Shown here piece by piece: positions 854 through 39,754 of a stretch of 64,000 nucleotides of DNA; within the stretch, counting starts at the first letter, position 1, and every line of letters starts with the position of its first letter. The notes beneath the pieces are model-generated. The model ran no database searches, was not told the DNA's origin, and worked only from the letters and a program-made list of their open reading frames with translations. The stretch is taken from assembly GCA_047495785.1 (NCBI GenBank), contig JBLDXI010000085.1:239368-303367 (forward strand). The letters are read 5' to 3'. Made by a program: the position numbers and the translations under genes. Source of the stretch: Lepidodermella squamata. Taxonomy: Eukaryota; Animalia; Gastrotricha.

Positions 854-3096
854 ATGGTATTGCTGATTTCAATAACCATCGTCTTTGTGGGTTTGTCTTA
901 TTATATCTAACATGATCTATCTAAAACTAACGGCTTCCTTTTCGATTAGGCATCGCCTTCTCCGAAGCAGGGCGACAGCCCAAGCACAGAGCATGGCGAC
1001 GTATCGCCCTCGGTGACGATGCTAACACTAACTCGAATGTGAATCGACTCGAGAGTTCGCCGTTTTTTTATTATGCGATCGATGACGGCAGCGACGAGGC
1101 CACGCCGCTGCTGCCATGGTGGATCTACTACTATCACCCAGAACCTACGACGCCGACTACAACATCGACAACGACAACAACAACTACGACAACAACAACT
1201 GCTGCCCCGGTATAAGGCTTATTATCATTTTAATCCATCTTATCGGGATGATAATCAAGGGGTTAATTTCTAAATACTGTATATCTACTAATTTTCGGTG
1301 GTCACTAATTTTCGGTTTCGGAGATTTCGGACCTGTACTTTTTATTTCGGTGGATTTGAATTCGGTTTGAGAGTTGATCCTGAGAAAAAAATTCGAAATT
1401 AGTCACTTTAAAATTGATTTCAGTGCTTCGATTTCGTGTTTTTACACGCTATCAGGAGATAATCCCTGCTTTAGCAGCATCAATGTCTGTTGCTTCCAAT
1501 ATCCTTACTACCTAAAATTGCAGGTAACACAATTTTGGCACATTTTACCCTACTTTACCATGATGAAGCTGTATTTTAGAAAAGAACAATAAATTGGCCA
1601 TTGGCCGAATTTATTTTCGGTGATTTTGAATCCGGTGTTTCCTCAAAAACACCGAATTCAAAGATCAAACCGAAAATTAGTGACCACCGAAAATTAGTAG
1701 ATATACAGTACTGCATTATTTAAAAAACGATCATTCATTATTAAAATAATCTCTTATGACGCGATTGAACAACTGATGTCTCATGGTGCAAATTTCATAT
1801 TGTAATTAGTAATATAGATATAAGTTGTTAACCTAAACCAAATATTAAAATTTGACTCTCAAAGCAAACTTTTAACAATTGTCGTTTTCGAAAAATTATG
1901 TTGCATAAGGTCATGATGACCTCTAACTTCATTCTTCAAGCTTCACGAAATTGACGAAATCTGAGCGGTTACTGGGTTTTCCAAAATTCCAATATTCCAG
2001 AATTTACAAAAAATTCGAATTTGCAAACATATGATAATTTATTTCTACTGATCTCAATCCTTGTCACTTTGAGGTTATTTATCTATCTTTTATAATGTAA
2101 TTTCCATGAGGTAATTAGTAGTAGTTTTCGTCCGTGTAGTAGAACATTTTTTATGGCAGTAGAACCAACATAAAAAGGACCACGGCGCTTCTTCATAGAA
2201 GTACAGCTTTATGTCGTTAACAACGCGCCAAAACAACCACTTAGATGACTCATTCGATCGTACTTTTACTCGCCTAACGTAATGATGAAGTACGTTAGGC
2301 CTTTTGAGCACCGATTTTTTCATTTATCGAACGTACTTTACTCATAAAATCTATAAATAGTAAAGTGGTTGTTTTGGCGCGTCGCTAACGATATCGACGT
2401 TGTTCACATTCGAGTTGGCATTTGAATTTGTCATCGAGCAAAATTTGGCGCCATTTTTTGTATTTGTGATTCCGCCTAGCAGCAGGAATTCTTGCTTCAG
2501 CAAAAGCGATGGCTGTTAACAAAAAATCATAGAGCACTACGTTCTCTATGCAAAAAAACAACATTATTTTTCATTAAGCGTTGATTAATTTTTTTAATTT
2601 CCGTGGACGTGCAATTTTGTGAATTCTGCTTCAGGCCGTCTTTCGGTGTATCGGACCAAACGGCGTTGTTACGTGCCGACCAACCGATTGCAATGGCGAT
2701 GAGATGAAGTTCCCGTCGAAAGCCTTCACAAGCCAATCAGCTTGTGAAAACGCAGTCAAAACCGTGGAATATCTCCCTGGAGCCTTTTTTCGCCCTACAG
2801 CCGACACAAATTGCAAGCGGTCCGGTGGGCTATTGGCGACTATCCAAACGCAGGCGGAGCTTGACAAAGCCTTGGCAGATCTTGGCTTCTCTGCTTTCGC
2901 CCACATTGGCTTGACAAATAAGTCTGGAAATTGGGCGTGGGACGACGGCACGCCTTATGCCAACTTTCCGCCCTGGGATTCTGGCGAGCCCAACTTCGGC
3001 ACAAATGCCTGCGCCTATCTTTACCAAGGCGGGGTCCTTAAAGACTCGGACTGTAACGTTCGCGCGAGCGGTTCTTTTTGTGAAACCTACGCTTGA
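854..3096 (+). CDS. Secreted C-type lectin, type A head (gene A1); probably chimeric with a B-type CTLD exon
   Basis: Predicted exons 854-890, 950-1209 and 2635-3096 with GT-AG and compatible phases. Signal peptide MVLLISITIVFVG, conserved KHRAWRRIALGDDANTNSNVNRLES..PWWIYY peptide, poly-Thr, then CTLD with HIGL, W.W.DG, EPN and FCE. Splicing across the 1.4-kb intron is inferred. Confidence 0.7.
1277..1708. mobile_element. MITE, Tc1/mariner-like, TA target duplication
   Basis: ~42-bp terminal inverted repeats CTGTATATCTACTAATTTTCGGTGGTCACTAATTTTCGGTTT, with TA at 1275-1276 and 1709-1710. Removing it restores 'tactgc', as seen in the paralogous intron of gene A2 (~20569-20574). Confidence 0.9.
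2115..2515 (-). pseudogene. Inverted relic of a type A' head exon (paralog of 28978-29315)
   Basis: Reverse strand reads AIAFAEARIPAARRNHKYKKWRQILLDD..NANSNVNNVD / KLYFYEEAPWSFLCWFYCHK, matching gene A5 exon 2. It is frameshifted and split by an insertion. Confidence 0.8.
2212..2393. mobile_element. Small inverted-repeat element inserted in the pseudo-exon
   Basis: Imperfect ~30-bp TIRs (tgtcgttaacaacgcgccaaaacaaccactt / aagtggttgttttggcgcgtcgctaacgata) interrupt otherwise contiguous exon homology. Confidence 0.7.
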
Positions 3097-3713
3097 AGCT
3101 GAAGAAACTTATCGGACTATATTAAGAGTCGACATTTGACTTTAAACTCTCTTTGTGTTGAAAATTTAAATTTGTGTTGAATCGGACCTCATCTGAGTTT
3201 ATTTTGATGCCTTAGTTGGGCAACCCTCGGCGCTACTGCGGATTGCCCCACAGTAAACCTGCTGCCGCTGCCAACTAGCCAGAAGTAAACTCTTTTTTCA
3301 GTCCACATGAACACCTTGTTTTGGAAGCAACCTGGCATTGCAGCAGCTCCTTCGACTTTAGTTAATAAGGTTTTGTGCGGTGTTTGCACGTCGGTTTCAG
3401 TCCTGCTTATGGCCAGAGCTTCGGATTTAATTTGATTCGACTTACTTCTTAACTCACGGAACTCATTTAATCAATCAAAATTAATCAATAACCCATTTTT
3501 ACAGAAATAAATAAATCAAATCAAATCAAATCAATCATTGACATAGATAAATCACAATAAATAATGAAATATCAAGATTTTTACATATCTTTGGAAATTC
3601 TTTGGAAATTCAAGCAATGGATAAAATAGCGAAAATTTGAAACTGCCGTCCCTCTACATATCTAATTTCTATCAAAAAGGACGGAACTACCTTAGCGGCA
3701 TCCGAGATTTTCG

Positions 3714-5192
3714 AATTTCAAGCAGTGCTCATTGAATGGCTTGCTGGTCACTTGCGTACCAATCAACCAAACGTGCCCTAACAGCGAATTAGGATCCTCG
3801 AAATAGGGGGGTATTTCGGGCCCCAATTTTATGACCAAAGGGTGTGGAAAATCCCCCTGTGGGTTTTTTGGGGATTTTCCACACCCAGCCGAACTGGATA
3901 GCCCTCATTCCCCCCGTACTTCGCGCCCTGTTAGTTAGTGTATAAATTTTATCTTCTGTTTTTTAGAATATAACTATATATATGTCGTACCGTTTTAGGC
4001 GATCCTCCCAAAAGGCAATTGGGATAACCCATGAGGCAATATGCCTAAGATGGAGATATAAGATACCGCTAAGGACAATAATTGACAACATCTAGAAACA
4101 CCGAATATTTCCTCCTGTAGCCTAAAAAGGTTGCTCACTGATTAAATTTCTAACTCGGTGGGTTGATAGAGATATAAGAAAGCTTTCCCGAAGTTCAAGC
4201 GCCAAAAACCGACTAATAGGTCATAGTTGGCAGCTGGAACTTTTGCTGAACCTTCAAGGTTCAAGATAATGATCCTAGTTCCGACTGATTGATTTCGTCA
4301 TCTAAAGCAATTGATCAGTCTAAAAAGTAAACCCAACCCCATAGTTCACATCAATCGAATCTCATGGAGCCTGAAAGAGTCTCTAGGATCAACTTCTGTG
4401 GAAAAAAGGAATCTAAAAATTCAAGCAAGGGGAACCACATACTAGAACTGGGGAACCAGAAATGAACTTGCTAGGGTTGACATCCTTTAAGAAAATTTAA
4501 ATTTGAGTATTATTTGAAATTTCCAGTCATTAATGCCAAAAAATGACAATAAGTAGAGAATAAATTGAAAATACCACGATTATCGGTCATCGATGTATCG
4601 TTTTGAGAAATAATTATTTTGAGAATTATTAATTTGCTTAAAAAGTGGATTTTTAGAGCAATTGCTCTAGAGGGTAACCCAATTGCCAATTGGGGCGGAT
4701 TGCTCATAACGGTACGACATATATATCTCGTAATCACATATATCGTTTAAGTATCTTAACTATTGATCAGATTAAATTGGCTTTTTCTTTTTGTTCACAA
4801 GGCTACCGGTAGTCGAACATATGCCAACCTAGCAACTTGCGTCGATGGGAAAAGTTATTTTCAATAAATTATTATTGTCCTCTTGTAGCTCACTTGATTT
4901 TCAGTTCTGGTGCCAGACAGTGAGAAGCCACATGTCCGCTGTCTTAGCAACCCTGGGCGAATTTTCAATGGCTGCCGTCTCAGCTCAACCGGGTGCTGGG
5001 CTAGCAATGAGACCCAGGAGGCAGCCCCAAAGCCGTACATCAACCGTGATAACTGCCTTCGAGGCGTAAGCTCTAAGTTGAACTTGATTCCAATAGTCAG
5101 ACTCTGTGTCTTTATCCCAGGCTGCAGCACAGTGTGACTCGAGCGGAACGAAGCTTTGCGTTGGGAGATCCTGTCCTGCGTGGTCTACTCAG
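3714..5192 (+). pseudogene. Truncated type B lectin gene (B0): internal Cys-module exons only
   Basis: Homologs of B1 exons 5-8 (FKQCSLNG.., ATGSRTYANLATCVDGK, PDSEKPHVRC.., AAAQCDSSGTKLC..). No signal-peptide exon or CTLD exon was seen; it runs straight into 3'UTR-like sequence at ~5197. Confidence 0.8.
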
Positions 5193-5942
5193 GTATTGAA
5201 GATGAAGAATCTTATCGGACTATATTACGAGCCGATACATTTGACATTCGACTCTTTCTGTGTTGAATGTCTACAATTTTATTTTGAGAACCTGCAATTT
5301 TGAGTAGTGGCGACGCCTTGAAATCAAATACGATATTAGGCGTGACAATAATAAAGACTGTTTAATTCGACTCCTTTCAACCTTTCATTCGTAGCTCGTC
5401 GAGAAATTATTCAATAATAAAACCTGTGGACCATTGCGTTCACCGTTGAGCACCTTCCATGTGCTTGCTAACTTTCGCCTTGCTTTTAGGCCTCAGCATA
5501 GATACATTCCACTTCCAAGCAAGGTTCGATCCCGGCGGATGCACACATGTTTGGCATTTGTTTGAAAGTAGCGTAGACGCCACTATGAAGGATATAGCTG
5601 AAATTTCCCATCAGTTTTGGAGTTCGCAATATGAACTCAGAAACCAGCGGTTCGATTCGAGATTTCGATTCTCGATGAGACCTTCATATGCTTTTCAATC
5701 AAACAACAGCATGCAAGCCTTCTATGGAAGGGCCTAGGGATCGTGGTAGAGAGTATCATTCGCACTGTGAAGCTGTTGGGTTCAATTTAGGTCATTTTTC
5801 GCGTAATCTCTGGAAGATTATTTGCTATATGAAAATTTCCTTCGACTTGGCTCCCAGCCAACAATTAATTTGTTGTTTTGAATTTTGTTAGCACTTGTTT
5901 TTTGTATTTTTAGCAGTTTTGGTGATGACACCTGTTTCGATT

Positions 5943-6015
5943 TCTATAAATAGATAAAATACGTGATTCCTGTAAACAGCTGATATTGAATTCGGACGCA
6001 CAGATTTCGCGTGCT
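5943..6015 (+). promoter_or_regulatory. Conserved upstream block of type B genes
   Basis: ctataaatagataaaatacgtg..taaacagc..ttgaattcggacgcacagatttcgcgtg is repeated at ~9551-9625 and partly at ~37845-37905, about 80-150 nt before each ATG. It contains TATA-like and forkhead-like (RTAAAYA) words. Confidence 0.55.
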
Positions 6016-6090
6016 CCTACGTGATATTAAATTTGGTGGAGTATTTTTTTTAAAGCGTTCATTCGAATTAGTTTCAACATTCTTCTTAAC

Positions 6091-8183
6091 ATGACGAGGG
6101 CTGTAGGTCTTTTCTTCATATTTTGTCTATTTGGAGGTGTTTCGTGCCAATGGAAGCGCTGTATGTCACTGCTCGACAATTCATTCGTGGACTGTGCGAC
6201 GTCTTGTGATGCATTGAAGGAATATCAAGTTATTTTATAATTCTCCGATTTGTTTACCTTTATTTGGCTAAATATTCCACAGTCCGGCTCCAGCATTACC
6301 ACTTATGATTCATGTCGAAGTGGAGTAAGAAACCATTTAAAATGCATTTTCCGTATCTGATTTTGTCTTCCTGAAACAGAATGGTCGCATGTGTTACAAA
6401 TTCGCTGCCCTAACCACAAGTTGCCGCCCTGGCAATGTTCCTTGTAAAGGTCCTGACGAAATATCAGTGCGTTAGATTATCAATCAATTTCAGCTTTGAT
6501 TATTTTCTCGATCATCAGTTTCAGCCTTTCTACAGCCGCTCGTTGCTTCGCTCGAGCTTGCAATTATGCGAAACCGATAGACTTAACTTTGCGGTACGTT
6601 GGGGATTTTAATAAATTAATAATTGAATGAAAAGCTGTTTTATTTGTTTCAGAATCAATATTTCAAGCAGTGCTCATTGAATGGTTCGCTAGTCACATGC
6701 GTCCCAATCAACCAAACTTGCCCTAGCAGCATGGTAAAGTTTTCAAGACTTGATTACAGATACTATGACCTATTAGAAGTTCCGAAAGATTTTCGCTGGC
6801 TATCGTCTTATAGGATTTTCGAGAGACATAAGAATGGGTATTTTCAGCCCCGAATTTATCTCATCAAAAGGCCCTCTCTGTGGTTTTTCTGGGTTTTCTT
6901 GGCTGGAACTCTCGAGGTAGGGAATACGGTACACCTCGTAATTCGCATACTTCTTCTTCTTATCATACTTTAACTCTTAAAATAATAGTATTTGTTCACA
7001 AGGCTACCGGTGGTCGAACATATGCAAACCTTGCAACTTGCGTCGATGGGAAAAGTGAATTTATTTATTTTTTTTGGATTTTTAACTCTAACAGCAGCTT
7101 ATTTCAGTTCAAGTACCAGACAGTGAGAAGCTACATGTTCGCTGTTTCAGCAACCCTGGACGAATCTTCAATGGCTGTCGTCTCAGCTCAGTCGGCTGCT
7201 CGCCTATCAACGAGACCCAAGAAGCAGCCCCCAAGCCGTACCTCAACCGGGATAACTGCCTTCGAGGCGTAATAAGTTTAATTTAATTTTTGTGTCGGAT
7301 GAGCATTTGTAAATTCCAGGCTGCGGCTCAGTGTAGCTCAAGTGGAACGAAGCTTTGCTTTGGAAGAACATGTCCCGCAGGATCGACCCAGGTAGGAACC
7401 TCTTCTTTTCAGTTTCGATAATATTTGCAACTTGAATTCGTTTGCGCCCTTTTTAAAAAAATCATGAAATACAGTGATGAATGAGCTATCAATCACTACT
7501 ATAACTATCTCTATATCATTCTAGCATTTGAGGAGCCTTACATGAAACCGTTACTGCCATTTCAGATCAAGCTCCACCAAAATTCGTCTTCCTTCCAAAC
7601 AAATTACGACAACTGTTTAGCTGAACTTACACCGGCGGTAAGATTTATGCCGAAATTTTGCATTATCCACAGTTTCACGATCCTTATTTTAATGAAACTC
7701 CGCATTCTTCTTCATCAGGCCGTCTTTTATCGGTGTCTTGGACCAAACGGCGTCGTTACATGCCGCCCAACAGATTGCAACGGTGATGAAAAGAAATACC
7801 CATCGAAAAGCTACTCCAGCCAATCGGCCTGTGAAAACGCAGTCAAATCCGTTCAACACTATAAGCAGACCATAAATCGCCCAGGAGCCGATGAATATTG
7901 CAAGAATCTCGGCGGGCTATTGGCTACTATCAAGACGCAGGCAGAATTTGACAAAGTTAGGCAAAATCAAATCCACATGGCCCACATTGGCTTGTCGAAT
8001 ACGCCTGGATATTGGACGTGGGACGACGGTACGCCGTTTGCCAACTTCCCGCCCTGGGATACTCGCGCTGGCTCGCCTAATTATGGTGAAAATGCCTGTG
8101 TTGCACTAATCGATGGTGGGGTCCTCAGAGACGGCAGCTGTAACATTACCGCGTTTAGTTTTCTCTGTGAAACTTTTGCTTGA
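6091..8183 (+). CDS. Secreted multi-Cys-module C-type lectin, type B (gene B1), 10 exons
   Basis: Exons approx. 6091-6228, 6283-6324, 6380-6466, 6519-6593, 6653-6733, 7003-7054, 7108-7269, 7320-7391, 7567-7638 and 7719-8183 splice in frame. Signal peptide ends ..GGVSC; terminal CTLD has SPN. Confidence 0.85.
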
Positions 8184-8827: not shown

Positions 8828-8990
8828 GGTACAGCGACAAAACATCAGTTACGCAGTACAGCGAATGCAACGAAACAGCTAATTTTTCATTTCGCGACAA
8901 AACAGCATAAAACTAACTATTTAAAAGATGCAACGTGTTTCTGCTGTTTTGTCACGTTTGCTGTTTTGAGTATTTGCTGTTATGACTCAA
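8828..8990. repeat. Copy of the short non-autonomous element found at 14794-14974, opposite orientation
   Basis: Starts ggtacagcgacaaaac and ends ..tttgctgttatgac, matching the reverse complement of 14800-14974. Internal ACAGC/GCTGT subrepeats. Confidence 0.65.
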
Positions 8991-9700: not shown

Positions 9701-11629
9701 ATGAGGGCTTTGGCTTTATTTTGCTCTTTACTTTGCCTATTTGGAGGTGTTTCCTGCCAATGGAAACGCTGTATGTCACTGCTCGACAACTCATTCGTTG
9801 ACTGTTCGACTTCTTGTGATTCATTGAAGGAATACCAGGTTAATTTTATAATTTTTCCGATCTTTTTCAAAATTGGCAACAATTTTTTATTAGTCCGGTT
9901 CCAGCTTTTCCGCCTATGATTTGTGTCGAAATGGGGTGAGCGAGCATAAAGCATTCATTCCAAAGCTGATTTTTTATTCGAACTTCGAACAGAATGGTCG
10001 CATGTGTTACAAATTCGCAGCTCTGACTCCGAGTTGTCGGCCCGGCATAATTCCGTGTAAAGCTCCTGATGAAATATCGGTACGTAATTATTTCTTCAGA
10101 AATTAGCTCAGTTATTTAAAGTCATGCATTGATCAGTTCCAGCCATTCTACAGCCGATCACTACTTCGCTCGAGTTTGCAGTACTGCGAAATCGATAGGA
10201 ACAATTTTACGGTAAGTCGTCACCTTAAAAAAGATTTCGTCATAGGCAAGCCTGTTTGTTCATCACAGAATCAACATTTCAAGCAGTGTTCATCGAATAG
10301 TTTGTTGGTCACGTGCGTTCCTATTAACCAAAACTGCCCGATTAGTACGGTTTGTAAATAATTTAGCTATGAATTTTTTAAGCGGACCTTCGCCTGTGTT
10401 CTCCTAAAATTTCGGTGAATTCTTAGTCGGTAGAAACTGGTTACTAGTTTCTTAGATCTGGGAGGAGAACATTTTAACAAAACCATATCTATTCATTCAC
10501 TCTTCGAAAAAGGGACAGCTTGGCATGCAGTTACTGATATTCTTGTATTTTTCTTAGATTAATGGTAGCCAAACATTCGCAAACCTTGCTGCATGCGTTG
10601 ATGGGAAAGGTTAGGAGATTTTATTCTAAATTTCTTTGGGAATATTGCTATCTTTTATCAGTTCAAGTACCAGACAGTGAGAAGCCTCATGTTCGCTGTT
10701 TCAGCAACCCTGGACGAATCTTCAATGGCTGTCGCCTCAGTTCAACCGGCTGCACGGGTAGCAACGAGACCCAAGAAGCAGCCCCGAAGCCGTACATCAA
10801 CCGGGAAAATTGTCTTCGAGGCGTAAGATAATTTTTCATCTTTTTCTGATGAGGATTTGTTTTTTCCAGGCTGCTGCACAGTGTGATGTGGGCGGGACAA
10901 AGCTTTGTGTTGGTAGAGCCTGCCCTACTGGTTCGACTCAGGTAGGAAAACTTTCCTTGAGGTTACTTCTCTGCAAAAATCTTCACCGTTCGACAATAAA
11001 TCAAGGACAATTTTATGTTGAAATTTGTAATTTCAGATGAAGCTCTACTCAAATTCGACATCCTTCCAAATGAATTACGAGACTTGTTTGACAGACATTA
11101 AGCCGGTAAGTTTTGAACCATTTTTTTTAATTTCCGTGGCCGTGAAATGTTGTTTTTTCCACAGCCAGTCTATTTTCGGTGCCTCGGACCAATGGGCGTT
11201 GTTGCATGCCGCCAAACAGATTGTAACGGCGATGAGAAGAAATACCCATCGACCAGCTACATCAGCGAGACAGCTTGCCTCAACGCAGTCAAAACCGTGA
11301 CGTTGTATGCGCAGTCCAAGTTTCGCATTCAAACAAGTAATTTTTGCAAGAGCCTCGGTGGGCTATTGGCGACTTTCAAGACGCAGGCGGAACTTGACAA
11401 AGCTATGGTTGACAAAGGCGCGTTGGCGTTTGTCCACATTGGCCTGTCGAATCAATCTGGAAATTGGACTTGGGACGATGGCACGCCGTATGCCAACCTC
11501 CCGCCCTGGGAGTCTGGCTGGCCTACGCCGGCCGTAGTCTCCTGTGCCATGCTTTACGATGGCGGGATCATTAAAGTCGGCTACTTCAACGATGTAGCGC
11601 TTGGATTTTTCTGTGAAACTTTCGCTTAG
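9701..11629 (+). CDS. Secreted multi-Cys-module C-type lectin, type B (gene B2)
   Basis: Same 10-exon structure as B1. First exon 9701-9838 (MRALALF..WKRCMSLLDNSFVDC); terminal exon 11165-11629 encodes the CTLD. Confidence 0.85.
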
Positions 11630-20139: not shown

Positions 20140-21260
20140 ATGGTATTGATCGTTTTAATAATAACCATCGTCGTTGTGGGTTTGTCTAAATTTAAAATGT
20201 AAATTAGATAACTAAGCGGTGCTTTTTCGATCAGGCTTCTCTTTTTCTGAAGCGGGGATTCCTACTGCCAGGCGACAATCGAAGCACAGAGCATGGCGGC
20301 GTATCGCCCTCGGCGACGATGCTAACACCAACTCGAATGTGAACCGTCTCGAGGGTTCGCCGTATTTCTACTATGCAATTGATGACGGCAGCGACCAAGT
20401 GGCTCCGCTGGTGCTGCCATGGTGGATCTACTACCACCCAGAACCTACGACGCCAACGGCGACGACAACGACAACGACAACAACAACAACAACAACAACA
20501 AATGCCCCGGTAAGGCTTATTTATGTAGTCCTTTATGTAGGAGGATACTCGTAGGGCTCATTTCCTATTACTGCTTAAATCCCAGATAATTGGGGCCTTT
20601 TTTAACTAAAATTTTCTTTAATGACACGATTTTACAACTCTGAACGAAGCTGAATAAATAAGAGTGGCCAAAGAAAACATGCCGGCTCTTCCCCGACCAT
20701 CAAAAATCTGAATCTTGGGACTATTTATAATGCTTCCCTCGATGAACGACGTAATGATCTAATTTCCATTAATTTTCATCGATGCTATTTTTCAGGCTGT
20801 ATTTTCTCGCTGTCTCGGTCCTGATGGCGTTGTGACATGCCGATCGACAGCCTGCGACGGTAGTGAGAAGAAATACCCGCAGACGACCTATGCCAGCAAG
20901 TCAGCATGCGAGAACGCCGTGAAAACGTTGGCATTCTACCCTATCGGCGGGCCACTCGCTAATGCCGTCACATATTGTACGAACCTCGGCGGACTGCTAG
21001 CGAGCATCAAGACCCAGGCGGAGCTTGATCTAGCCATGACGCTCAAAGGCGCATTTAACCAAGCTCACATTGGTCTGTCGAATGTATCCGGGCAATGGCG
21101 ATGGTCTGATGGCTCGCTCTACGCTAACATGCCGCCCTGGGGCACCAGCCAACCAGATGCTGGGCCCAATTCTTGTGCCGTTCTTTACACTGGGGCTGTT
21201 GTTTATGATGGAGGCTGCGGCGCGTTGGCACCTGGATTCATGTGCGAAACATTTGCCTGA
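20140..21260 (+). CDS. Secreted C-type lectin, type A (gene A2), QPD motif
   Basis: Exons 20140-20179, 20235-20509 and 20796-21260: signal peptide, conserved head peptide, poly-Thr, CTLD. Confidence 0.88.
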
Positions 21261-22177: not shown

Positions 22178-23336
22178 TTATGCATAAGTTTCACAGAAAA
22201 ATGCATAGAAATTATTGCTGCACGAAAAGTCGAAAATAACAGGGCTACCGCTGAAATAGTCCATAACAGCACAAGCATCTGGACCAGCATTTGGCCGACC
22301 GGAGAGCCAAGACGGGATGTTGGCATACGGCGCACCATCGGACCACACCCATTGCCCAGACTCATTCGACAGGCCAATGTAGCCGTCCGAGACCGCCAGA
22401 GCATCGGTAGCTTCATCCTGTGTCTTGATTGTCGCCAACAGCCCGCCGATGCTCGCGCAAGTTGCAATCGCCTGGTCGCGAGTCATTGAGGTTGAGTAGA
22501 ATTTTAATGTTTTAACGGCGTTCTGGCACGCCGACATGCTGGGGAAGGACGTCGATGGGTATGGTTTCTCAGTCGCTTGGCAAGCTGTCTCTCGGCATGT
22601 CACTGCGCCATTTGTTGCAAGGCAACGGAAAACCACCTAACAATAAAACCGATTAAAGTTCGTTCAAAATTTGAAAAATTGAATTTCTCAAACTTGGTAG
22701 AATGGATAAATAACGAGAAAAAATGCAGTAGAACATTTTCTTTGCAAACTTCATAGGGCAGCAAATTTGTTACGAACATTGAGAAAGACACATGTATCAC
22801 AGCCTATAATTTTTCTCCAAAAGCAAATGATTTCTAATTCCTAATATTATGCTTTTAAATGATCTGAAAATTTGAAAATCTTATTTTTAATTCTTGAAAT
22901 TAGGTTTCAAAGCGAGTAATATTGATTTTCTCTGTGTGGTGATTTCTTATCACCATTTTTAAATAATTAATAATTCATACCGTCACAGTAGTTGTTGCCG
23001 GCGTTGTCGTCGATGTTGTCGTTGGCGTGGTCGTTTGTTTCGGGTGATAGTAGATCCACCATGGCATCAGCGGAGCCACCTCGTCGCTGCCGTCATCGAT
23101 CGCATAGTAGAAATACGGCGAACCCTCGAATCGATTCACATTCGAGTTGGTGTTAGCATCTTCGCCGAGGGCGATACGCCGCCATGCTCTGTGCTTGGGC
23201 TGCCGCCTGGCAGTAGCAAGTTCCGCTTCAGAAAAAGCGATGCCTGAGCCAGAAGAAAATAATGACTTTATGATGATACATCAATGAAGAAAGAACAACC
23301 TATGAAGGCGAGGCTTATGGAAATTATCAACTGCAT
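22178..23336 (-). CDS. Secreted C-type lectin, type A (gene A3), RPN motif
   Basis: Exons 23336-23300, 23243-22981 and 22636-22178; same architecture on the minus strand. Confidence 0.88.
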
Positions 23337-25321: not shown

Positions 25322-26147
25322 ATGAAATTTATCGTAAGCCTCACAATCATCACGGGTTAGTCTTCATAATTATGTTGAATAAATTGTTTTTGCTACCACT
25401 CTCAGGCATTTCCTTTCTTGAAGCGGTTTCCGCTGCAAGGCAACACAGAGCATGGCGACGTATCGCCCTCAATGACGATGCGAACACCAACTCGAACGTG
25501 AACAAAATCGAAGGCTCGCCGTATTTTTACTATGCGGTCGATGACGGGGCACCAGTGCCGCCCTGGTGGATTTTCTATCACCGTAAAACAACAACGACTA
25601 CGACAACTATCGCACCAGTAAGACTAATATAAATCCCAATTGAACAAGTCGCGAACCAATTTTTTGCTATGCTTGTTAGGATTTTTTCCGATGTCTCGCC
25701 CCTGATGGCCAAGTTACATGCCGCCCAACGGCTTGCCAAGCCAGTGAGAAGCCGCACCAAGCAACAACCTTCACCAGCATGACGGCATGCCAGAACGCCG
25801 TAAAAACGTTGAGTTACTTCGCAATCACTTCTGATATCGCACTTGCAATCTCAACTTGCGCTGGCACCAGCGGACTCGTGGCGACAATCAAGACACCGGC
25901 GGAAGCTGCAACTGCCCTGGGCCTTTCTGGTGGCTCATTCGCTTACGTTGGATTGTCGAATCAGGCCGGGCCGTGGATATGGTTCGATGGCACGGCGTAT
26001 GCCAATTACCCGCTTTGGCACATCGATCAACCTGATAACGGCGCGAATGCTTGCGGCGCTCTAAGCAACGTGGCTGTCAATCCTGTTCTCCTGGATTTTC
26101 CGTGTACCAACAATTTGTTTGGCTTTTTCTGTGAAACTTTCGCGTAA
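25322..26147 (+). CDS. Secreted C-type lectin, type A (gene A4), QPD motif
   Basis: Exons 25322-25355, 25406-25617 and 25680-26147 in frame; short Thr stalk. Confidence 0.88.
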
Positions 26148-28885: not shown

Positions 28886-29224
28886 ATGAACTTCTCGATT
28901 TTTCTAGCCGTCGTTCTATTTGGTATAAGCAATTTCAAACATGCTTTGTCCTAAAATTCTTCGTTCTTTGTTGACAGCCATAGCTTTTACTGAAGCTGGA
29001 ATTACAGCTGCTAGGCGGGATCGCAGATACAAAAGATGGCGCCATATTTCGCTGGATGAAAATTCGAATGCCAACTCGAATGTGAACAACGTCGATGCTA
29101 AGCTGTACATCTATGACAGTGAAGAAGCGCCATCGCCCTTTCTATGGTGGTTCTACTACCATCGAAAAGTTTCGACTACAACACCAGAGCAGCGGACGGA
29201 AACCTCAACATCAACAACATCATC

Positions 29225-29256
<32 letters not shown>

Positions 29257-29854
29257 CTACTACTACTTCTACTACTACAACGACCAATGACAATAATGCT
29301 ACGACACCTGAGCCCGTGAGTTGATTTCCGGCCTTCGAGATTAGAAATCGATTATAAAAAAATTTTGCACCCCATTTTTTCTTCATTAGGCCGTGTTTTC
29401 TCGGTGTCTCGGCCCTGATGGCTTTGTAATGTGCCGATCGACACCCTGCGACGTAGTTGAGAAGAAATACCCGTCGACAACGTATGCCAGCATGTCAGCT
29501 TGCCAGAACGCTGTCAAAACGATAACATTCTACCCTATCGGCGGGCTGCTTCCAGACGCCGTCACGTATTGCACGAACCTCGGCGGACTGCTGGCGACTA
29601 TCAAGACCCAGGCTGAACTTGATCTGGCTATGACACTCAAAGGCGACGTTACGCTGGCTCACATTGGCCTGTCGAATGTGTCCGGGCAATGGACATGGTC
29701 TGATGGTACGCCGTATGCTAACATGCCGCCCTGGGGCCCCAACCAGCCAGATGCTGGGCCCAATTCTTGTGCCGTTCTCTACGATGGGGCAGTTGTCTAC
29801 GACGGTGGCTGTGGCGCTGGGGCACCTGGATTCCTATGCGAAACATATGCTTGA
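28886..29854 (+). CDS. Secreted C-type lectin, divergent type A' head (gene A5), QPD motif
   Basis: Exons 28886-28922, 28978-29315 and 29390-29854; longest Thr stalk in the cluster. Confidence 0.88.
29207..29283 (+). repeat. Coding (ACA)n/(ACT)n microsatellite encoding the poly-Thr stalk
   Basis: Trinucleotide run in exon 2 of A5. Similar runs at ~1147-1200 and ~20446-20500. Confidence 0.9.
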
Positions 29855-33900: not shown

Positions 33901-35180
33901 TTACTGAATTTCAATCCATCGGAAACGTATTCTATCGGATCTGTCATTGCTGTTTCATGCTTGGATGGCTTCGCATTGCAAGGACCCGAATTTGTCTATT
34001 GCCTAGCCAACAACTCGTGGTCGCAACCCGGCAACTGTATTGCGCATGGTATGTCATTACGCAGAAAATTTAGCTTCATAAGTCATATCGAAAAATTTCA
34101 CAATTTTCGTACAATTCATTTCATTAAGATGAAAGTGATCACTACGTTCTCTATGATTAGAAATGTGTAAGCAAAACACCCGATTTTCTGAAATGGGGAG
34201 CTTATTTTCAAATTTGCAAAGCACGATGCTCGAGCTAGAATATACTTTACATGTAAAGGGTCCCTCTGTGGTTCTTTCGGGTTTTGAGGCTTGGAAATTT
34301 CGAGCTGGAGGTACCCCCTTACCTCCTTGTACTTATAATTTTTTTTTGAATTTCCCGTATTTTGCGAACACTGGCAAATTATGCTATTTTTGTACTTGGA
34401 TAAGGTTCTTGCGTGGTCCCTACTATCGAAAACGGCTCCGTTACTGATGAACTGGGGTCGAAGCGTTACGAACCACTCGCAACACTCGCACCTGGTTCAA
34501 TCATCGTAATTCATTGCAACAAGACCTTCGAAGTCGTTAATGGTTCCATGGTTTCAACTTGCTCATTCGAGTCAAAATGGAGACCCGAGCCTGGTTCGTG
34601 TCGCTTCAAGGTAACAAAATTCCATGAACAAATCTGCAGTAGCCTATCTTCCTTTTTCCAGGATGCAACGGCCGAACAATTCTTGCTTATCGAAGCTGTA
34701 AAATCTGGTAACTTGAGCGTTGCTAAGAAATTGGTGGAACAAGGAGCTGTGAACGTGAACTGGCGTGACGAGAGGTCTCAAGGCGATTGGCCGGTCAAAA
34801 ATGGAACTGCACTACACATCGCCTTAGCTTTCAAAGCCCCTCTGAACTTCATTCGTTTGCTCGTCGAAGAAGGTCGTGCTGATGTGAATCTCAAGGAGGA
34901 TACATACGGTTCACGGCCGCTTGAAATCGCAGTGTCGGAATGTAGCGGCGACGTTGTTGAGCTTTTGCTCAGAAATGGCGCTGCTATCGATGCGAGAAAT
35001 GGCCGTGAGGGCTACACGGCTCTCATGGCGGCGGCTATCAAGGGCAGGCTTGATAATGTTCAGATTCTGGTTCAATACGGCGCTAGTGCGAAGCTGAAGT
35101 CAAAGAAGGGAACAACCGCCCTTGATGAGGCTATCTCAGCCAACCGTGACCAGGTCGCTCGATTTTTACGTGCTCTGTAA
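30955..35180 (+). CDS. Signal-peptide protein: ankyrin array, 4 sushi/CCP domains, ankyrin array
   Basis: Exons approx. 30955-31932, 32118-33333, 33383-33561, 33615-33795, 33854-34048, 34406-34610 and 34662-35180 splice in frame. G.T.LH.A repeats; sushi exons with C..G(Y/F).L.G....C....W....C. Confidence 0.82.
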
Positions 35181-35729
35181 ACTGAACGGTATCATCTAAC
35201 GTATCATTTTACTAGTATTGGGTTTTTGGTCGAGTTGATCTGAGAATAAAGAGCTTTGTTGATCTTGAATCATCAGTCATGCTTTGTTATTTTCTTGTTA
35301 GATGACTTTTTGTTGAAGACTTGACAGCGACGCAATTCCCAAATGGTTACGGAGTCGTAGTGTTGTATTCGATACACAATTATCGCAGCAGTGCCTCGCC
35401 ATAAAATGTTGCCTCCTATTTTGATTCCTTTGAACTCGTGGAACTCGAGAAAAGCTTGTGTGACCACTTTAGCAGCTAAGACTTATCGCGAATTCTCGAA
35501 TCAGTTTACCAGTAGTAATTTTCCAGAAAATGTGGCCCGCTCTCAGCACTGAGTTGATTTTATTGATTCATTTATCGCTATGCGAGGCTGCCAGTCCAGA
35601 CAGTAAAACCACTACGCCGAAAAAATCAATTGAATGCTAATGATCACGAGACAGACGCGAGATCGATGAGAGATGGGAAAAATCAATTTCAGATGATGCA
35701 TCAATTTTCAATTTTCAATTTTTTTAGCA

Positions 35730-36676
35730 ATGAAATTGATCATTTCAATAAGCCTTGCCTTAATAGGTTTTTCCTTCTTCAATATGTTTTACCAACAAAT
35801 AAATGTTGTCTCTATTATCAGGCAATGTTATTTCGGAAGCTACTACCAGGCAACAGCCCAAGCACAGAGCATGGCGACGTATCGCCCTCGGCGACGATGC
35901 TAACACCAACTCGAATGTGAATCGACTCGAGAGTTCGCCGTATTTCTACTATGCGATCGATGACGACATGGGTCCGCCGCTGCTACCATGGTGGATCTAC
36001 TATCACCCGAAACCATCGACAACGACGCCGACTCAAGTGAGAACTCTTCATAAAAATAGTAGCAATAAAATTATGAGCGAATTAAGCCATGTAATTGACA
36101 ATGCAATTAATTAATTGGCTGTTCTATAGAGTTTGCAAATATTTTCTTCTGAAAAGTTTACATCAGTGGCCGAAAACTTTTGGTTTTGAATTGTATCGCT
36201 ATCATCAGGTTGTTAACCGGTGCCTTGGACCAAATGGCGCAGTGACATGCCGAGAGACAGCTTGCCAGGCCACTGAGAAGCCATACCCATCGACGACCTT
36301 CACCAGCATGCCGGCATGTCAGAACGCCGTTAAAACGTTCAAATTCTACTCAACCCCTACATCAAGTCGCGACGAGGCGGTCGCAACATGCGCGAGCGTT
36401 GGCGGGCTGTTGGCGACAATCAAGACACAGGCGGAGGCCCTCGATGCTCTGGCGATCTCTTCGAACATGGCCGCCTACATTGGCCTGGTGTCGAATGCGT
36501 CCGGGCAATGGACGTGGGTCGATGGCGCTCCGTATGCCAACTACCCGCCTTGGGGCTCTGCTGGTACTGGTAGAAATGCGTGTGGAGTTTTGAACTTGTT
36601 TAATGGCAGCCCTGTTATTGTCGACGTATCGTGTAGCAATACATTCACAGCATTTTTCTGTGAAACCTATGCTTAA
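35730..36676 (+). CDS. Secreted C-type lectin, type A (gene A6)
   Basis: Exons 35730-35766, 35822-36036 and 36209-36676. The CTLD loop lacks the xPx motif (WGSAGTGRNAC). Confidence 0.88.
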
Positions 36677-37986
36677 TCAAAACAAAACTGACATGGCTAC
36701 AATCTATAATGACTATTGTCTGATACCACTTTAACTTTGAAGAGCACAGATGACCTTTAATAAATAGCGTATACCACACCACTCTTTGGTCGCCTTTGTA
36801 TTACTGTCCAAGAAATAATAAAATGGTCATTATTTCACAGGCTGTCGAAAGCTGTGTATGCTGAGACGCTAGGATGTTACTGAAATTACAAGAGTTGATT
36901 TAATTTATGTAATTTAGCAATCACCGCCATGTGGCTATTCCACGCCGCTATGCCGAACCTTCGAACTTCGTTATTGTGAAATAAATGAAAGCGTATCTGA
37001 CGAGAAGGAAGTTTCTTCCCTAATTCTTTATACGAAGTTTCTTTCGACGTCAAGGCCTAGTGGATTTTGTGAGGTGATACAGAGCCACTTTGCGAGGATT
37101 TGCCGAGGAAATTGGTAAGTCACCGATGATTACTGTTTTGCCTAGTTCTTTTCCTTTTTATTCGTCATTTTGAAATTTGGGAGCTACTCCCGAAATCTTG
37201 GTCACTATGAATTAATTCAAATTGTGCCATTTTTCGGCTCTCCATAGGTCATGTTTTTTTGAGGGAAGATAGGCCGAGTGGTCAGATATCGGCAAACATC
37301 AAATCAGACTGATTAAATGAAAATCGAAAAAGTCGTTCATCTAGGAAAAACTATTATTTGAACCATTCACGAATAGCCATTCCGCCGTTTTTGTCATAAA
37401 TTCAAATTAGTTTCAGCTGATGCCTCATTTCATTTGATATTGCGCTCTTCAGGAGCAATCTCTTCTAATTTGTGTTACTTAAAGTTCTTCTTGGTCTATC
37501 AAAATTAAGACCATGAGACCGAAGACCGTACCAAATCAGCGACAAAAGGTCTCAAAAAGACCGATACCGGAAAAATTGTATGGTCTTGGTCTCACTTGAA
37601 AGACCAGACCGAAAGTCTGGGTCGAAGTGAATACGATTTTCAAGCAGGACTGACCCTGATACGCCTGAAATTGCGAGAATGTTTATTGCCGATTGGCAAT
37701 TCGACCTGTCTTCAATCCAAAACAGCTTTGTTTTCATATTTCTCTCTGATTTCCGACTCTTGGGAGGTCACAAAAGAAATTATATAAAAAACAGGTTGTT
37801 TTGATTTGGAATTTAAGGTCACGTGTTTAGTTTTTATTCCTAACGTAAATACACTTTATTTGCAGCGTAAACAGCCTATTGAATTCGGACACGGTGATCG
37901 CGTGGACTTCAGTTCAGTTCAGACTTTTTTATTTATCCGCCATTCAAGTTATTTTTTAAGCTTTTTAAGCGTTTCAAGCTTAAGAC

Positions 37987-39754
37987 ATGATAAAGTTCGC
38001 AGCTTGCTTGTCGTTATTTTGCGTATTTGGCGGTGTATCCTGCCAATGGAAACGCTGCATGTCACTACTCGACAACTCATTCGTGGACTGTTCGACATCT
38101 TGTGACCTATTGAAGGAATACCAGGTCTATTATAACTTCTCCACTGTTTAGCCCTTCAATAATCAAATCAAAACCCTTTAGTCTGGTTCGAGTTTCACTA
38201 CGTTCGATTTGTGTCGAGCTGGAGTGAGTAATTTTAAGAATATTTCTCTTCAAAAACATTTGTAAATGTTCTCGAACAGAATGGTCGCATGTGTTACAAA
38301 TTTGCCGCGTTAACTCCAAGTTGCAGGCCCGGCATTGTTCCATGCAAAGCTCCAGATGAAATATCGGTGCGTTACTTTGAAAGGTTATTCAACTTCAATT
38401 GCTTTCTCGATCAGTTTCAGCCGTTCTACGTCCGATCGATTCTTCGCTCGAGTTTGCAATACTGCGAAGTCGATAGAAATAATTTTGCGGTACGTCGAGA
38501 TTTACTATATTAAGATGCGATAATTGAAAGTCAAATTGTTAATTCGTTTCAGAATCAAAACTTCAAGCAGTGTTCGGCGAACAATACGCTCGTCACGTGC
38601 GTTCCAATTAACCAAACCTGCCCGAATAGTACAGTAAGTGAATTTACCCCCCGATCCCACCCCCCTTCCGTCTACGCCCCTGAAGGGAGTTGATGGTGAT
38701 CCTTCATTTTTCAGGTAATAGGTGGACGAACATTTGTCAACCTTGCTACGTGTGTTGACGGGAAAAGTGAGACAATTCGGCTGTTGACCGTGGACATGGT
38801 GTACTATTATTGAAATCTATTTCCAGTTCAAGTACCAGACAGTGAGAAGCCACATGTTCGATGTTTCAGCAACCCAGGGCAAGTCTTCAACGGCTGTCGT
38901 CTCAGCTCAATCGGCTGTTCAGCTAGCAACGAGACCCAAGAAGCGGTTCCGAAGCCATACATCAACCTTGATAACTGCCTTCGAGGGGTGAGTGTAACTG
39001 TTAACAAAATCTCGAAATCAGTTCTTGTTGTTTCAAGGCTGCTGCTCTGTGTGATTTAGGAGGATTCAAGCGGTGCGTCGGAAGACCATGCCCTGAAGGA
39101 TCGAGTCAGGTAGGTAACATAAGAAACATACTTTCTACTTTTAGTTTAAAGGCATTTTCTGATCAGATATTGGTCTACTCAAATTCGACTTCATTTGAAA
39201 CAAACTATAGGACATGTTTGGCTGATATGACTCTGGTGAATTTTCGGCCTTGCAACGTCAGCATTTTCCATTTTTTTATTCATCAGGTTGTTAACCGGTG
39301 CCTTGCACCAAATGGCGCAGTGACATGCCGAGAGACAGCTTGCCAGGCCACTGAGAAGCCATACCCATCGACGACCTTCACCAGCATGCCGGCATGTCAG
39401 AACGCCGTTAAAACGTTCAAATTCTACTCAACCCCTACATCAAGTCGCGACGAGGCGGTCACAACATGCGCGAGCGTTGGCGGGCTGTTGGCGACAATCA
39501 AGACACAGGCGGAGGCCCTCGATGCTCTGGCGATCTCCTCGAACATGGCCGCCTACATTGGCCTGGTGTCGAATGCGTCCGGGCAATGGACGTGGGTCGA
39601 TGGCGCTCCGTATGCCAACTACCCGCCTTGGGGCTCTGCTGGTACTGGTAGAAATGCCTGTGGAGTTTTGAACTTGTTTAATGGCAGCCCTGTAATTGTC
39701 GACGTATCGTGTAGCAATACATTCACTGCATTTTTCTGTGAAACCTATGCTTAA
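37987..39754 (+). CDS. Type B head joined to an A6-like CTLD exon (gene B3, chimeric)
   Basis: Nine B-type exons starting MIKFAACLSLFCVFGGVSCQWKRC. Terminal exon 39287-39754 is nearly identical to 36209-36676. Confidence 0.87.

What the first reader, a model, noticed from the sequence alone, without database searches (positions are those of the whole stretch)
854..39754. Mix-and-match lectin locus: two unrelated heads combined with exchangeable lectin exons
Seen: nine genes share one terminal cassette (4-Cys mini-module plus CTLD) that always begins after a phase-0 intron, attached to either an A head (conserved peptide plus mucin stalk) or a B head (five Cys modules). Head relationships and CTLD relationships disagree in at least three places: A6/B3, A1 versus B1/B2, and A2/A5. 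Inference: recombination or gene conversion in the phase-0 intron generates combinatorial scaffold-by-specificity diversity, as in a diversified recognition, mucus or adhesive system. I do not recognise either head as a named domain.
Basis: partly seen in the sequence, partly recalled or inferred. Interest (0 to 1): 0.9.

Follow-up and report, generated by a model that had tools for sequence, protein, structure and literature searches.

The report
Lectin gene cluster with swapped exons
Nine neighbouring genes for small secreted sugar-binding (C-type lectin) proteins, in an unidentified invertebrate, have repeatedly exchanged their last exon between two unrelated kinds of front end; this is a clean example of exon shuffling, which is a known way of evolving, not a new one.

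Summary
Nine terminal exons (a 4-Cys mini-module plus a C-type lectin domain) each follow an AG acceptor in phase 0. Six carry an A head: signal peptide, conserved about 60-aa peptide, Thr-rich stalk. Three carry a B head: signal peptide plus five 4-Cys modules in nine exons. RNA contigs confirm the 10-exon B3 model.

All three claimed discordances are supported.
- **A6/B3:** they share a 675-nt tract at 97% identity (cassette dS 0.04; B heads dS 0.74-0.87). It starts within 7 nt of the acceptor.
- **A2:** its head is closest to A3/A6, but its lectin exon is closest to A5. This holds at third codon positions too.
- **A1:** an A head precedes a B-type lectin exon that still carries about 45 nt of B-type intron.

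So exon-level exchange at this intron happened at least three times in the germline. Nothing shows a dedicated diversity-generating system.

Corrections:
- The B head probably repeats the cassette's own module.
- A headless B fragment and an inverted, frameshifted A5-type head relic also lie here.
- A1's 1.4-kb intron is unverified.

Neither head matches any named domain or any public protein. Unchecked first-reader notes report the same module-plus-lectin family, and a similar domain swap, on other pieces of this genome.

The parts
854..1209 (+). A1 head: exon 1 at 854-890 (signal peptide, phase 1) and exon 2 at 950-1209 (conserved peptide plus Thr stalk), ending in phase 0 at donor GTATAAGG
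   Evidence: The head core is 85-87% nt identical to A2, A3 and A6.
2135..2526 (-). Inverted relic of an A5-type head exon (2526-2393 and 2209-2135). It is 87-88% identical to the A5 head, is frameshifted, carries a 183-nt insert and has no cassette. It lies inside the putative A1 intron.
2589..3162 (+). A1 cassette unit: about 45 nt of B-type intron 9 tail (2589-2634), the cassette exon 2635-3096 (gamma clade, EPN motif), and a 3' flank shared with the B0 tail
3714..5267 (+). B0: partial B gene with exon 5 (3714-3785) and exons 6-8 (4808-5192) only. The exon 8 donor runs straight into a gamma-type stop and 3'UTR remnant (5196-5267). Exons 1-4, exon 9 and the cassette are absent.
6091..8183 (+). 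B1 gene, 10 exons, 414 aa: 6091-6228, 6283-6324, 6380-6466, 6519-6593, 6653-6733, 7003-7054, 7108-7268, 7320-7391, 7566-7637, cassette 7719-8183 (gamma clade)
   Evidence: all introns GT-AG, open frame
9701..11629 (+). B2 gene, 10 exons, 413 aa: 9701-9838, 9894-9935, 9993-10079, 10137-10211, 10269-10349, 10558-10609, 10662-10822, 10870-10941, 11037-11105, cassette 11165-11629 (gamma clade). It lacks one conserved CTLD cysteine.
20140..21260 (+). A2 gene, 259 aa: 20140-20179, 20235-20509, cassette 20796-21260 (beta clade, QPD). The head is crown type.
22178..23336 (-). A3 gene: 23336-23300, 23243-22987 (or 22981), cassette 22636-22178 (alpha clade). It lies tail to tail with A2.
25322..26147 (+). 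A4 gene, 237 aa: 25322-25355, 25406-25617, cassette 25680-26147 (basal alpha clade, QPD)
28886..29854 (+). A5 gene, 279 aa: 28886-28922, 28978-29315, cassette 29390-29854 (beta clade, QPD). The head is divergent (62-67% nt identity to the other A heads) and the Thr/Ser stalk is the longest.
35730..36676 (+). A6 gene, 239 aa: 35730-35766, 35822-36036, cassette 36209-36676 (alpha clade)
   Evidence: A DNA k-mer contig covering 35936-36258 spans the intron/cassette junction.
36202..36875 (+). A6 copy of the shared tract: 7 nt of intron, the whole cassette exon and about 200 nt of 3' flank, 97% identical to 39280-39952
37987..39754 (+). B3 gene, 10 exons, 414 aa: 37987-38124, 38182-38223, 38280-38366, 38415-38489, 38553-38633, 38715-38766, 38827-38987, 39038-39109, 39167-39235, cassette 39287-39754 (alpha clade, near-identical to A6)
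   Evidence: RNA contig joints; model and translation
39280..39952 (+). B3 copy of the shared tract

Best explanation
This is a lineage-specific tandem family of small secreted lectins.

**Proteins.** Each protein ends in one exon that encodes a 4-Cys mini-module fused to a C-type lectin-like domain. That exon is joined to one of two stalk/head designs:
- an A head: signal peptide, a conserved basic/aromatic peptide, and an O-glycosylation-type Thr run;
- a B head: signal peptide and five 4-Cys modules, mostly split into phase-0 exons.

**Evolution.** The family grew by tandem duplication. At least three times, germline non-allelic recombination moved a whole lectin exon, or a whole head, between paralogues. 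The mechanism was either ectopic gene conversion or deletion/duplication with breakpoints in the intron before the cassette. Both head types end in phase 0 and the cassette starts in phase 0, so every such join stays in frame.

**Result.** Four head types (A crown, A4, A5-type, B) are spread over three lectin clades (alpha, beta, gamma) in seven combinations.

**What is shown:** the gene structures, B3 expression and splicing, the different ages of head and cassette, and the positions of the boundaries.

**What is inferred:**
- secretion, from the hydrophobic N-termini and the lack of any membrane anchor;
- O-glycosylation of the stalk;
- ligand binding by the lectin domain;
- the idea that the head sets anchoring or oligomerisation while the lectin domain sets the ligand.
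For: - **Cassette identity.** There are nine cassettes with Lectin_C hits. The AlphaFold model has pLDDT 87, and residues about 40-155 match CD23, MCL, the mannose receptor and collectin-11 (probability 1.0, TM 0.6-0.7).
- **Phase.** All cassettes have phase-0 acceptors. The B3 splice pattern is seen in RNA contigs.
- **Cassette tree.** It has three clades at 99-100% support, with B3 inside an A clade and A1 with B1/B2. A/B monophyly is rejected at p = 3e-30.
- **A6/B3.** The tract is 97% identical over 675 nt with sharp edges. Cassette dS is 0.04, against 0.86-0.87 between the B3 head and the B1/B2 heads.
- **A2.** Head dS to A3 is 0.26 against cassette dS 1.13. Head dS to A5 is 1.23 against cassette dS 0.52. 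Closest-pair bootstraps are 1.0 in opposite directions, also at third positions.
- **A1.** The head is 85-87% identical to the crown heads. The cassette is gamma type with a B2-like intron tail and a B0-like 3' flank.
- **Unit of exchange.** No sub-exon mosaic is detected, so the whole exon is the unit.
Against: - Head-only topology is unresolved and does not reject the cassette tree (AU p = 0.11-0.27).
- The head alignment has only about 60 codons, so its dS values are noisy.
- For the older events (A2/A5, A1) the flanks have diverged too far to locate both breakpoints, and the direction of transfer is open.
- A1 may not be a working gene: its intron is 1425 nt with an inverted relic inside, and there is no RNA evidence.
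- A6 is essentially absent from the one RNA data set.
- The sugar-site motif is incomplete in all copies: EPN or QPD is present in four, and the Asn of WND is absent in all. Carbohydrate binding is therefore not assured.
- The DNA run that supports the junctions may be the same sample the assembly came from.
Confidence: 0.82

Rival explanations
1. Concerted evolution of the heads only. The cassettes kept their original partners, and the crown A heads (A1, A2, A3, A6) were homogenised by repeated gene conversion of exon 2 and its 5' flank. On this view the heads look young and the lectin exons are not mobile.
For: - The crown heads form a star at 85-89% identity with no resolved order.
- k-mer depth over the head core in the DNA run is about 13 times the single-copy level, so many near-identical head copies exist in the genome.
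- A2 and A3 are neighbours with head dS of only 0.26.
Against: - It cannot explain B3: a B head with an A6-type cassette and A6's 3' flank.
- It cannot explain the B-type intron tail in front of the A1 cassette.
- It is the same class of mechanism, namely exon-level non-allelic exchange at the same intron, so it changes the direction and not the conclusion.
Confidence: 0.25
2. Assembly artefact. The near-identical A6 and B3 cassettes, or the A1 arrangement, come from collapsed or mis-joined paralogues.
For: - Tandem paralogues are error-prone to assemble.
- DNA contigs break inside the repeated exon.
- The DNA run shows a weak odd joint 36009>39296 (one contig, 28 nt on the shorter side).
Against: - An RNA contig from a separate 2015 run joins B3 head exons to the cassette (38871-38986 with 39286-39460) with no mismatches. 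That stretch covers the B3-specific base at 39306.
- DNA contigs 35936-36258 and 38831-39336 each cross their own intron-cassette junction and include the copy-specific base.
- The two copies differ at 6 exon sites and more in the flank, which a collapse would not produce.
Confidence: 0.04
3. No exchange at all. One duplication history with strong rate differences between head and cassette (constraint on the heads, fast evolution of the lectin domains) mimics the discordance.
For: - Cassette dN is two to five times head dN in crown A pairs and in B pairs.
- The unrooted head tree does not reject the cassette tree.
Against: - The order of synonymous and third-position distances reverses between the two parts of the same genes.
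- Non-coding 5' flanks of the crown heads are still alignable at 72-75%, while their cassettes are only 58-64% identical.
- A6/B3 cannot be explained by rates.
Confidence: 0.03
4. A dedicated diversification system. Exchange at the phase-0 intron would be frequent and ongoing, either somatically or as intergenic splicing between neighbouring genes, and would produce a large head-by-lectin repertoire.
For: - Nearly all exons are phase 0-0, so read-through splicing between neighbouring genes would stay in frame.
- Seven head/cassette combinations occur among nine genes.
- Unchecked notes report related clusters and a LamG-for-CTLD swap elsewhere in the genome.
Against: - Only intragenic B3 junctions are seen in the RNA contigs.
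- The events are few and of very different ages.
- There are no sub-exon mosaics.
- There is no ordered bank of headless cassettes. The extra pieces are decayed relics.
Confidence: 0.06

Closest known systems
Snail VIgL lectins (FREPs, CREPs, GREPs of Biomphalaria)
   Same: They are secreted proteins in which one kind of N-terminal scaffold is combined with alternative C-terminal lectin domains, including a C-type lectin domain. They form multigene families and are read as immune recognition molecules (PMC5433772).
   Different: The VIgL scaffold is one or two IgSF domains. Here the heads have no Ig signal in Pfam. VIgLs vary the type of lectin fold, whereas this locus swaps divergent copies of one fold between two unrelated heads. 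There is no evidence here of the somatic variation reported for FREPs.
Collectins and ficolins (own knowledge)
   Same: They are soluble lectins built as signal peptide, stalk and C-terminal recognition domain. The same stalk type is found with different recognition domains.
   Different: There is no collagen Gly-X-Y stalk or coiled-coil neck here. The stalk is a Thr run or a row of 4-Cys modules. The WND Asn of the canonical Ca2+/sugar site is missing in all nine copies.
Hybrid genes made by non-allelic recombination or gene conversion in tandem receptor and lectin clusters, such as KIR, Ly49/NKC and Lepore-type globin fusions (own knowledge)
   Same: Neighbouring paralogues exchange whole exons or fuse through intronic breakpoints, and the frame is kept by matching intron phases.
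   Different: Here the partners have non-homologous 5' halves, so only the last exon can pair. The outcome is domain shuffling between two architectures, not hybrids of like genes.
Generic animal C-type lectin-like domains (Pfam PF00059; CD23, MCL, mannose receptor CRD4, collectin-11 as structural neighbours)
   Same: The fold and the four core cysteines match.
   Different: An extra N-terminal 4-Cys, three-strand-plus-helix module (residues 1-40) is encoded in the same exon. It was not seen in the hits inspected from a 1.84-billion-protein profile search. The only lead is a structural neighbour cluster in arthropods that carries Lectin_C plus Dumpy_DPY (TM 0.70).

Membership tests
C-type lectin-like domain (Pfam PF00059 Lectin_C) | Profile match above the curated cut-off | tested here: met
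   Five cassettes tested scored 27.8-42.9 bits against a cut-off of 22.6. All nine align at 47-99% aa identity to B3.
C-type lectin-like domain (Pfam PF00059 Lectin_C) | CTLD fold | tested here: met
   The AF2 model has pLDDT 87. Foldseek against PDB, AFDB and the Atlas gives CTLDs at probability 1.0 and TM 0.6-0.7 over residues about 40-155.
C-type lectin-like domain (Pfam PF00059 Lectin_C) | Four core cysteines (C1-C4, C2-C3) | tested here: met
   They are present in eight of nine copies. B2 has Phe in place of C3.
Ca2+-dependent carbohydrate-binding CTLDs (canonical CRDs) | EPN or QPD tripeptide together with the WND motif | tested here: not met
   EPN is in A1 and QPD in A2, A4 and A5. A3 has RPN, B1 has SPN, B2 has WPT, and the motif is deleted in A6/B3. 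The Asn of WND is replaced in all nine, and only the Asp remains in eight.
VIgL lectins (FREP/CREP/GREP) | N-terminal immunoglobulin-superfamily domain(s) before the lectin domain | tested here: not met
   No Ig family appears in Pfam scans of A and B head exons, even at E up to 10. The A head has no confident fold (pLDDT 51).
Collectins | Collagen-like Gly-X-Y stalk and alpha-helical neck before the CTLD | tested here: not met
   The translated heads show a Thr run or Cys modules and no Gly-X-Y repeat.
Exon shuffling by intronic recombination (phase-compatibility rule) | The exchanged module is bounded by an intron of the same phase in all partners | tested here: met
   A exon 2 ends in phase 0, B exon 9 ends in phase 0, and all nine cassettes start in phase 0.
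Exon shuffling by intronic recombination (phase-compatibility rule) | The homology boundary falls in the intron | tested here: met
   A6/B3: 7 nt before the acceptor. A1/B2: about 45 nt before the acceptor. It cannot be resolved for A2/A5, where homology is confined to the exon.
Programmed or somatic lectin-receptor diversification (VLR-like, FREP-like) | Variant junctions or mosaics within one individual, or banks of donor cassettes | tested here: inconclusive
   No sub-exon mosaic was found. Only germline junctions appear in contigs of one RNA run and one DNA run. Contigs drop rare variants, so absence is not shown.
Repeat family of the 4-Cys module (B-head modules are the same type as the cassette mini-module) | Significant profile similarity between module positions | tested here: inconclusive
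   All modules share the spacing C-x7-10-C-x3-6-C-x16-23-C. The best hhalign E-values are 0.007 (M1-M6, M3-M4) at low probability, and hmmsearch scores are weak.

The most novel reading that the evidence does not exclude
The phase-0 intron in front of the lectin exon is a repeatedly used exchange point across the whole genome, not just here. It would let a large family of orphan stalks (A peptide/mucin, 4-Cys rods) be re-paired with different recognition domains (CTLD clades, perhaps LamG), and so give this animal a germline combinatorial scaffold-by-lectin recognition repertoire comparable to snail VIgLs but built from unrelated parts. Read-through splicing between neighbouring genes might add to the mixing.
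Probability: 0.18. Interest if true: 0.7.

Novelty: new variant of a known kind. Interest (0 to 1): 0.5.

Why it matters
The locus catches exon shuffling at three ages in one 39-kb stretch:
- a swap so recent that both edges are still visible (A6/B3);
- an intermediate one (A2/A5);
- an old one with leftover debris (A1, B0 and the inverted head relic).

That makes it a compact natural case for studying how intron phase and tandem arrangement let unrelated scaffolds share a recognition domain.

It also defines a protein family with no detectable relatives: an orphan about 60-aa head peptide, and a 4-Cys module used both as a stalk repeat and as an N-terminal cap of a C-type lectin domain. First-reader notes suggest the family is large in this genome.

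If the lectin domains differ in ligand (EPN, QPD or neither), the family could be a recognition or mucus/adhesion toolkit worth testing.

Tried and rejected
- **Word-indexed protein search.** The A5 cassette alone and the nine-cassette alignment both gave no hits.
- **Exhaustive profile search of 1.84 billion representatives.** It gave 4626 hits. The top 150 were mostly multi-CTLD proteins. The five whose match reached into the mini-module region carry no such module.
- **Two metagenome scans.**
  - The cassette scan found nothing.
  - The head A scan gave one hit, L001, which is a chance 'AWRRIALGDDA' in a high-GC bacterial contig.
- **Pfam on the heads, at E up to 10.** Only noise came back (New_glue and SSP160 from the Thr run, Megourin).
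- **ESM Atlas feature searches of head A and B module 4.** Best scores were 0.70 and 0.69, so they are not informative.
- **AlphaFold of head A.** pLDDT was 51, so no fold search was run.
- **Unrooted AU tests on head data.** They lack power.
- **GENECONV-style run test inside the cassette.** Nothing survives correction for 36 pairs; the lowest raw p is 0.04.
- **Search for a decayed original cassette or B exon 9 inside the A1 intron.** Nothing was found.
- **Organism identification.** An Atlas search with a neighbouring receptor gene gave only the family (ANF_receptor) and no useful taxon.
- **Transcript evidence for the other genes.** Read laying allowed a single call, which I spent on 35400-39950. 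A1-A5, B1 and B2 therefore have no transcript evidence.


Full report
**Setting**

The window is eukaryotic, with about 41% G+C. Its introns are very short, GT-AG, and 47-81 nt in most cases. The organism is not identified.

The finding spans 854-39754. These are exactly the ATG of the first A gene and the stop of the last B gene.

**The cassette**

tblastn with one lectin exon finds nine copies and no more in the 64 kb. The five I scanned pass Pfam Lectin_C.

Each copy is a single terminal exon of 459-468 nt (152-155 codons plus the stop). Each is preceded directly by AG and starts on a codon boundary. For B3, RNA contigs show the junction 39235/39287.

An AlphaFold model built from the nine-sequence alignment is confident (pLDDT 87).
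- Residues about 40-155 superpose on CD23, MCL, mannose-receptor CRD4, collectin-11 and other C-type lectin domains.
- Residues 1-40 form an extra module of three strands and one helix with four invariant cysteines. It is encoded in the same exon.

The sugar-site tripeptide varies:
- EPN in A1;
- QPD in A2, A4 and A5;
- RPN in A3, SPN in B1, WPT in B2;
- deleted in A6 and B3.

The Asn of WND is missing everywhere, and B2 has lost one core cysteine. Canonical Ca2+-dependent sugar binding is therefore not assured.

**The heads**

A genes have three exons:
- a 34-40-nt signal-peptide exon ending in phase 1;
- a head exon ending in phase 0 at a GT donor;
- the cassette.

The head exon encodes a conserved peptide followed by a Thr-rich run of about 10-50 residues. 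The consensus is ...RRQPKHRAWRRIALGDDANTNSNVNRLEGSPYFYYAIDDGSD..PLLPWWIYYH.

B genes have ten exons. For B3, nine introns are seen or implied in RNA contigs from a 2015 run. The assembled model is an open 414-codon frame with GT-AG throughout. B1 and B2 have the same ten exons.

The B head is a signal peptide plus five modules with the spacing C-x7-10-C-x3-6-C-x16-23-C. Four of the five are split by a phase-0 intron after the third Cys. Only intron 6 is phase 1.

The cassette's own mini-module has the same spacing and a similar (S/T)(S/T)F...C tail. Profile similarity between module positions is weak, with a best hhalign E of 0.007. I rate 'same module type' as probable, not shown.

No protein has a membrane anchor after the lectin domain.

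Neither head has a named relative:
- Pfam gives only low-complexity noise.
- The Atlas searches give nothing.
- AlphaFold of head A is unconfident (pLDDT 51).
- Public protein and metagenome searches find no relative of either the head or the module-plus-lectin cassette.

- **B0.** It has only exon 5 (3714-3785) and exons 6-8 (4808-5192). Its exon-8 donor runs directly into a remnant of a gamma-type stop codon and 3'UTR. That remnant is 85% identical to the flank after the A1 cassette.
- **Inverted head relic.** A copy of an A5-type head exon lies on the minus strand at 2526-2393 and 2209-2135. It is 87-88% identical to the A5 head, frameshifted and interrupted by 183 nt. It sits inside the 1425-nt gap between the A1 head and the A1 cassette.
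- **Other genes in between.** These are a four-domain lectin-like/TSP1 receptor (13.3-19.0 kb), MULE-transposase reading frames (26.6-28.5 kb, minus strand) and an ankyrin gene (30.9-35.2 kb).

**Discordance 1: A6/B3**

Positions 36202-36875 and 39280-39952 are 97% identical over 675 nt.
- The left edge is 7 nt before the acceptor. Upstream of it the two introns are unrelated.
- The right edge is about 200 nt past the stop and is equally sharp.
- The exon differs at 6 of 468 positions (cassette dS 0.04).
- The B3 head differs from the B1 and B2 heads at dS 0.86-0.87.
- In the cassette tree B3 sits with A6, then A3, then A4 (100/100/84% support). Forcing B3 to join B1 and B2 costs 123 log-likelihood units (AU p = 3e-30).

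It is not an assembly collapse:
- An RNA contig joins B3 head exons to the cassette with no mismatch, and it covers the B3-specific base at 39306.
- DNA k-mer contigs cross each intron-cassette junction and include the copy-specific base.

The alpha clade otherwise sits on A heads. B3 most likely received A6's exon, and A6 is its immediate upstream neighbour.

Two routes fit:
- gene conversion that started where exon homology begins;
- fusion of a B head to a recent A6 duplicate, by a deletion with both breakpoints in the phase-0 introns.

I cannot tell them apart.

**Discordance 2: A2/A5**

| Comparison | Cassette | Head |
|---|---|---|
| A2 vs A5, nt identity | 83% | 64% |
| A2 vs A5, dS | 0.52 | 1.23 |
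| A2 vs A3, nt identity | 64% | 87% |
| A2 vs A3, dS | 1.13 | 0.26 |

Closest-pair bootstraps give A2+A3 for the head and A2+A5 for the cassette. Support is 1.0 for each with all sites, and 1.0 and 0.999 at third positions.

A2/A5 homology is confined to the exon, from the acceptor to the stop. At this age that does not locate a breakpoint.

Two cautions apply:
- The unrooted head tree is a star with one long A5 branch and does not reject the cassette topology (AU p = 0.11-0.27), so the case rests on reversed synonymous distances.
- The direction is open: either the A2 head or the A2 cassette was replaced.

**Discordance 3: A1**

- Its head is 85-87% identical to A2, A3 and A6, and about 150 nt of 5' flank is still alignable.
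- Its cassette groups with B1 and B2 (99% support). It is about 70% nt identical to them and 58-61% to the other A cassettes.
- The last 45 nt or so of the intron in front of it align with B2's intron 9, and its 3' flank matches the B0 tail.
- The triplet tests reverse again. For the head, A1+A3 is closest (bootstrap 0.97-1.0). For the cassette, A3+A5 is closest and A1 is the outlier (0.82-0.98).

The simplest reading is a rearrangement. It placed an A head in front of the cassette of a former B gene, with the breakpoint inside the phase-0 intron, and left debris around it.

Whether A1 is spliced across 1.4 kb is untested.

**What it adds up to**

There are four head types (A crown, A4, A5-type, B) and three cassette clades:
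- alpha: A3, A4, A6, B3;
- beta: A2, A5;
- gamma: A1, B1, B2.

They occur in seven combinations among nine genes. Starting from crown-alpha, A5type-beta and B-gamma, at least three exchanges are needed.

A run-length permutation test finds no mosaic inside the cassette, so the exon moves as a unit.

Crown A heads and B heads evolve more slowly at the protein level than their cassettes. Head dN is 0.07-0.16 and cassette dN 0.10-0.47. That fits a conserved scaffold with a changeable recognition end.

**Comparison with known systems**

The principle is known: a common scaffold with alternative lectin domains, and hybrid genes produced in tandem arrays.

The best-documented parallel is the snail VIgL family, which has IgSF heads joined to FReD, C-type lectin or galectin domains (PMC5433772). 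Collectins and ficolins are a vertebrate parallel (own knowledge).

This locus is not a member of either family, because it has no Ig domains and no collagen stalk.

What is new is the parts list (the orphan head peptide and the unrecognised 4-Cys module) and the unusually legible record of the swaps.

Nothing indicates a programmed or somatic mechanism.

First-reader notes on other pieces of this genome describe more 4-Cys-module/CTLD clusters and a LamG-for-CTLD swap. I did not check them. High k-mer depth over the head core in the DNA run is consistent with a larger family.

**Verdict**

Exon-level exchange at the phase-0 intron did happen. A dedicated diversity-generating system is not shown.
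- I rate it a new variant of a known kind, of moderate interest.

Noticed in passing
window 13251-19021 (+): A large multi-exon gene lies between B2 and A2. It has long open exons, a TSP1-type hit (TSP1_CCN, E = 4.5e-5, 24.1 bits, below Pfam's cut-off of 27), a Mid2-like Ser-rich/transmembrane stretch and a cytoplasmic tail.
   Followed up: partly
window 26607-28531 (-): Two abutting reading frames (450 aa and 193 aa) lie between A4 and A5. The larger has a weak MULE transposase hit (E = 0.0017). A transposon inside the cluster could have helped the rearrangements.
   Followed up: partly
window 30949-35180 (+): Long open reading frames rich in ankyrin-type repeats have an apparent N-terminal signal peptide.
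   Followed up: no
window 40879-44329 (+): Several long open frames. The 305-aa frame at 42573-43487 resembles ANF_receptor ligand-binding domains (class C GPCR or GABA-B like) by Atlas features (score 0.90, a lead only).
   Followed up: partly
window 49885-58012: Repeated segments: 49885-51184 and 54704-56008 are 81% identical, with further copies near 51.8 and 57.6 kb. Open frames at 51882-53141 look retroelement-derived by eye. This is probably a nest of retrotransposon copies.
   Followed up: no
window 36009 joined to 39296 in DNA run X2: One DNA contig joins the end of the A6 head core directly to position +10 of the B3 cassette, skipping 3286 nt. Only 28 nt lie on the shorter side, and depth is 36 against about 57 for single-copy sequence. 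It may come from a paralogue elsewhere or from a structural variant.
   Followed up: no
window 35856-36007 and 36160-36311: k-mer depth in the DNA run is about 769 and 347, against a baseline of about 57. This suggests roughly a dozen copies of the head core and several copies of the cassette start in the whole genome, more than this window holds.
   Followed up: no
window 14804-14964 and 59221-59462: Each stretch is its own reverse complement (70% and 86% identity), so both are palindromic.
   Followed up: no
window 11165-11629 (B2 cassette): B2 has Phe where all other copies have the third core CTLD cysteine, and WPT in place of EPN/QPD. The frame is open, but the domain may be decaying or changing function.
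   Followed up: partly
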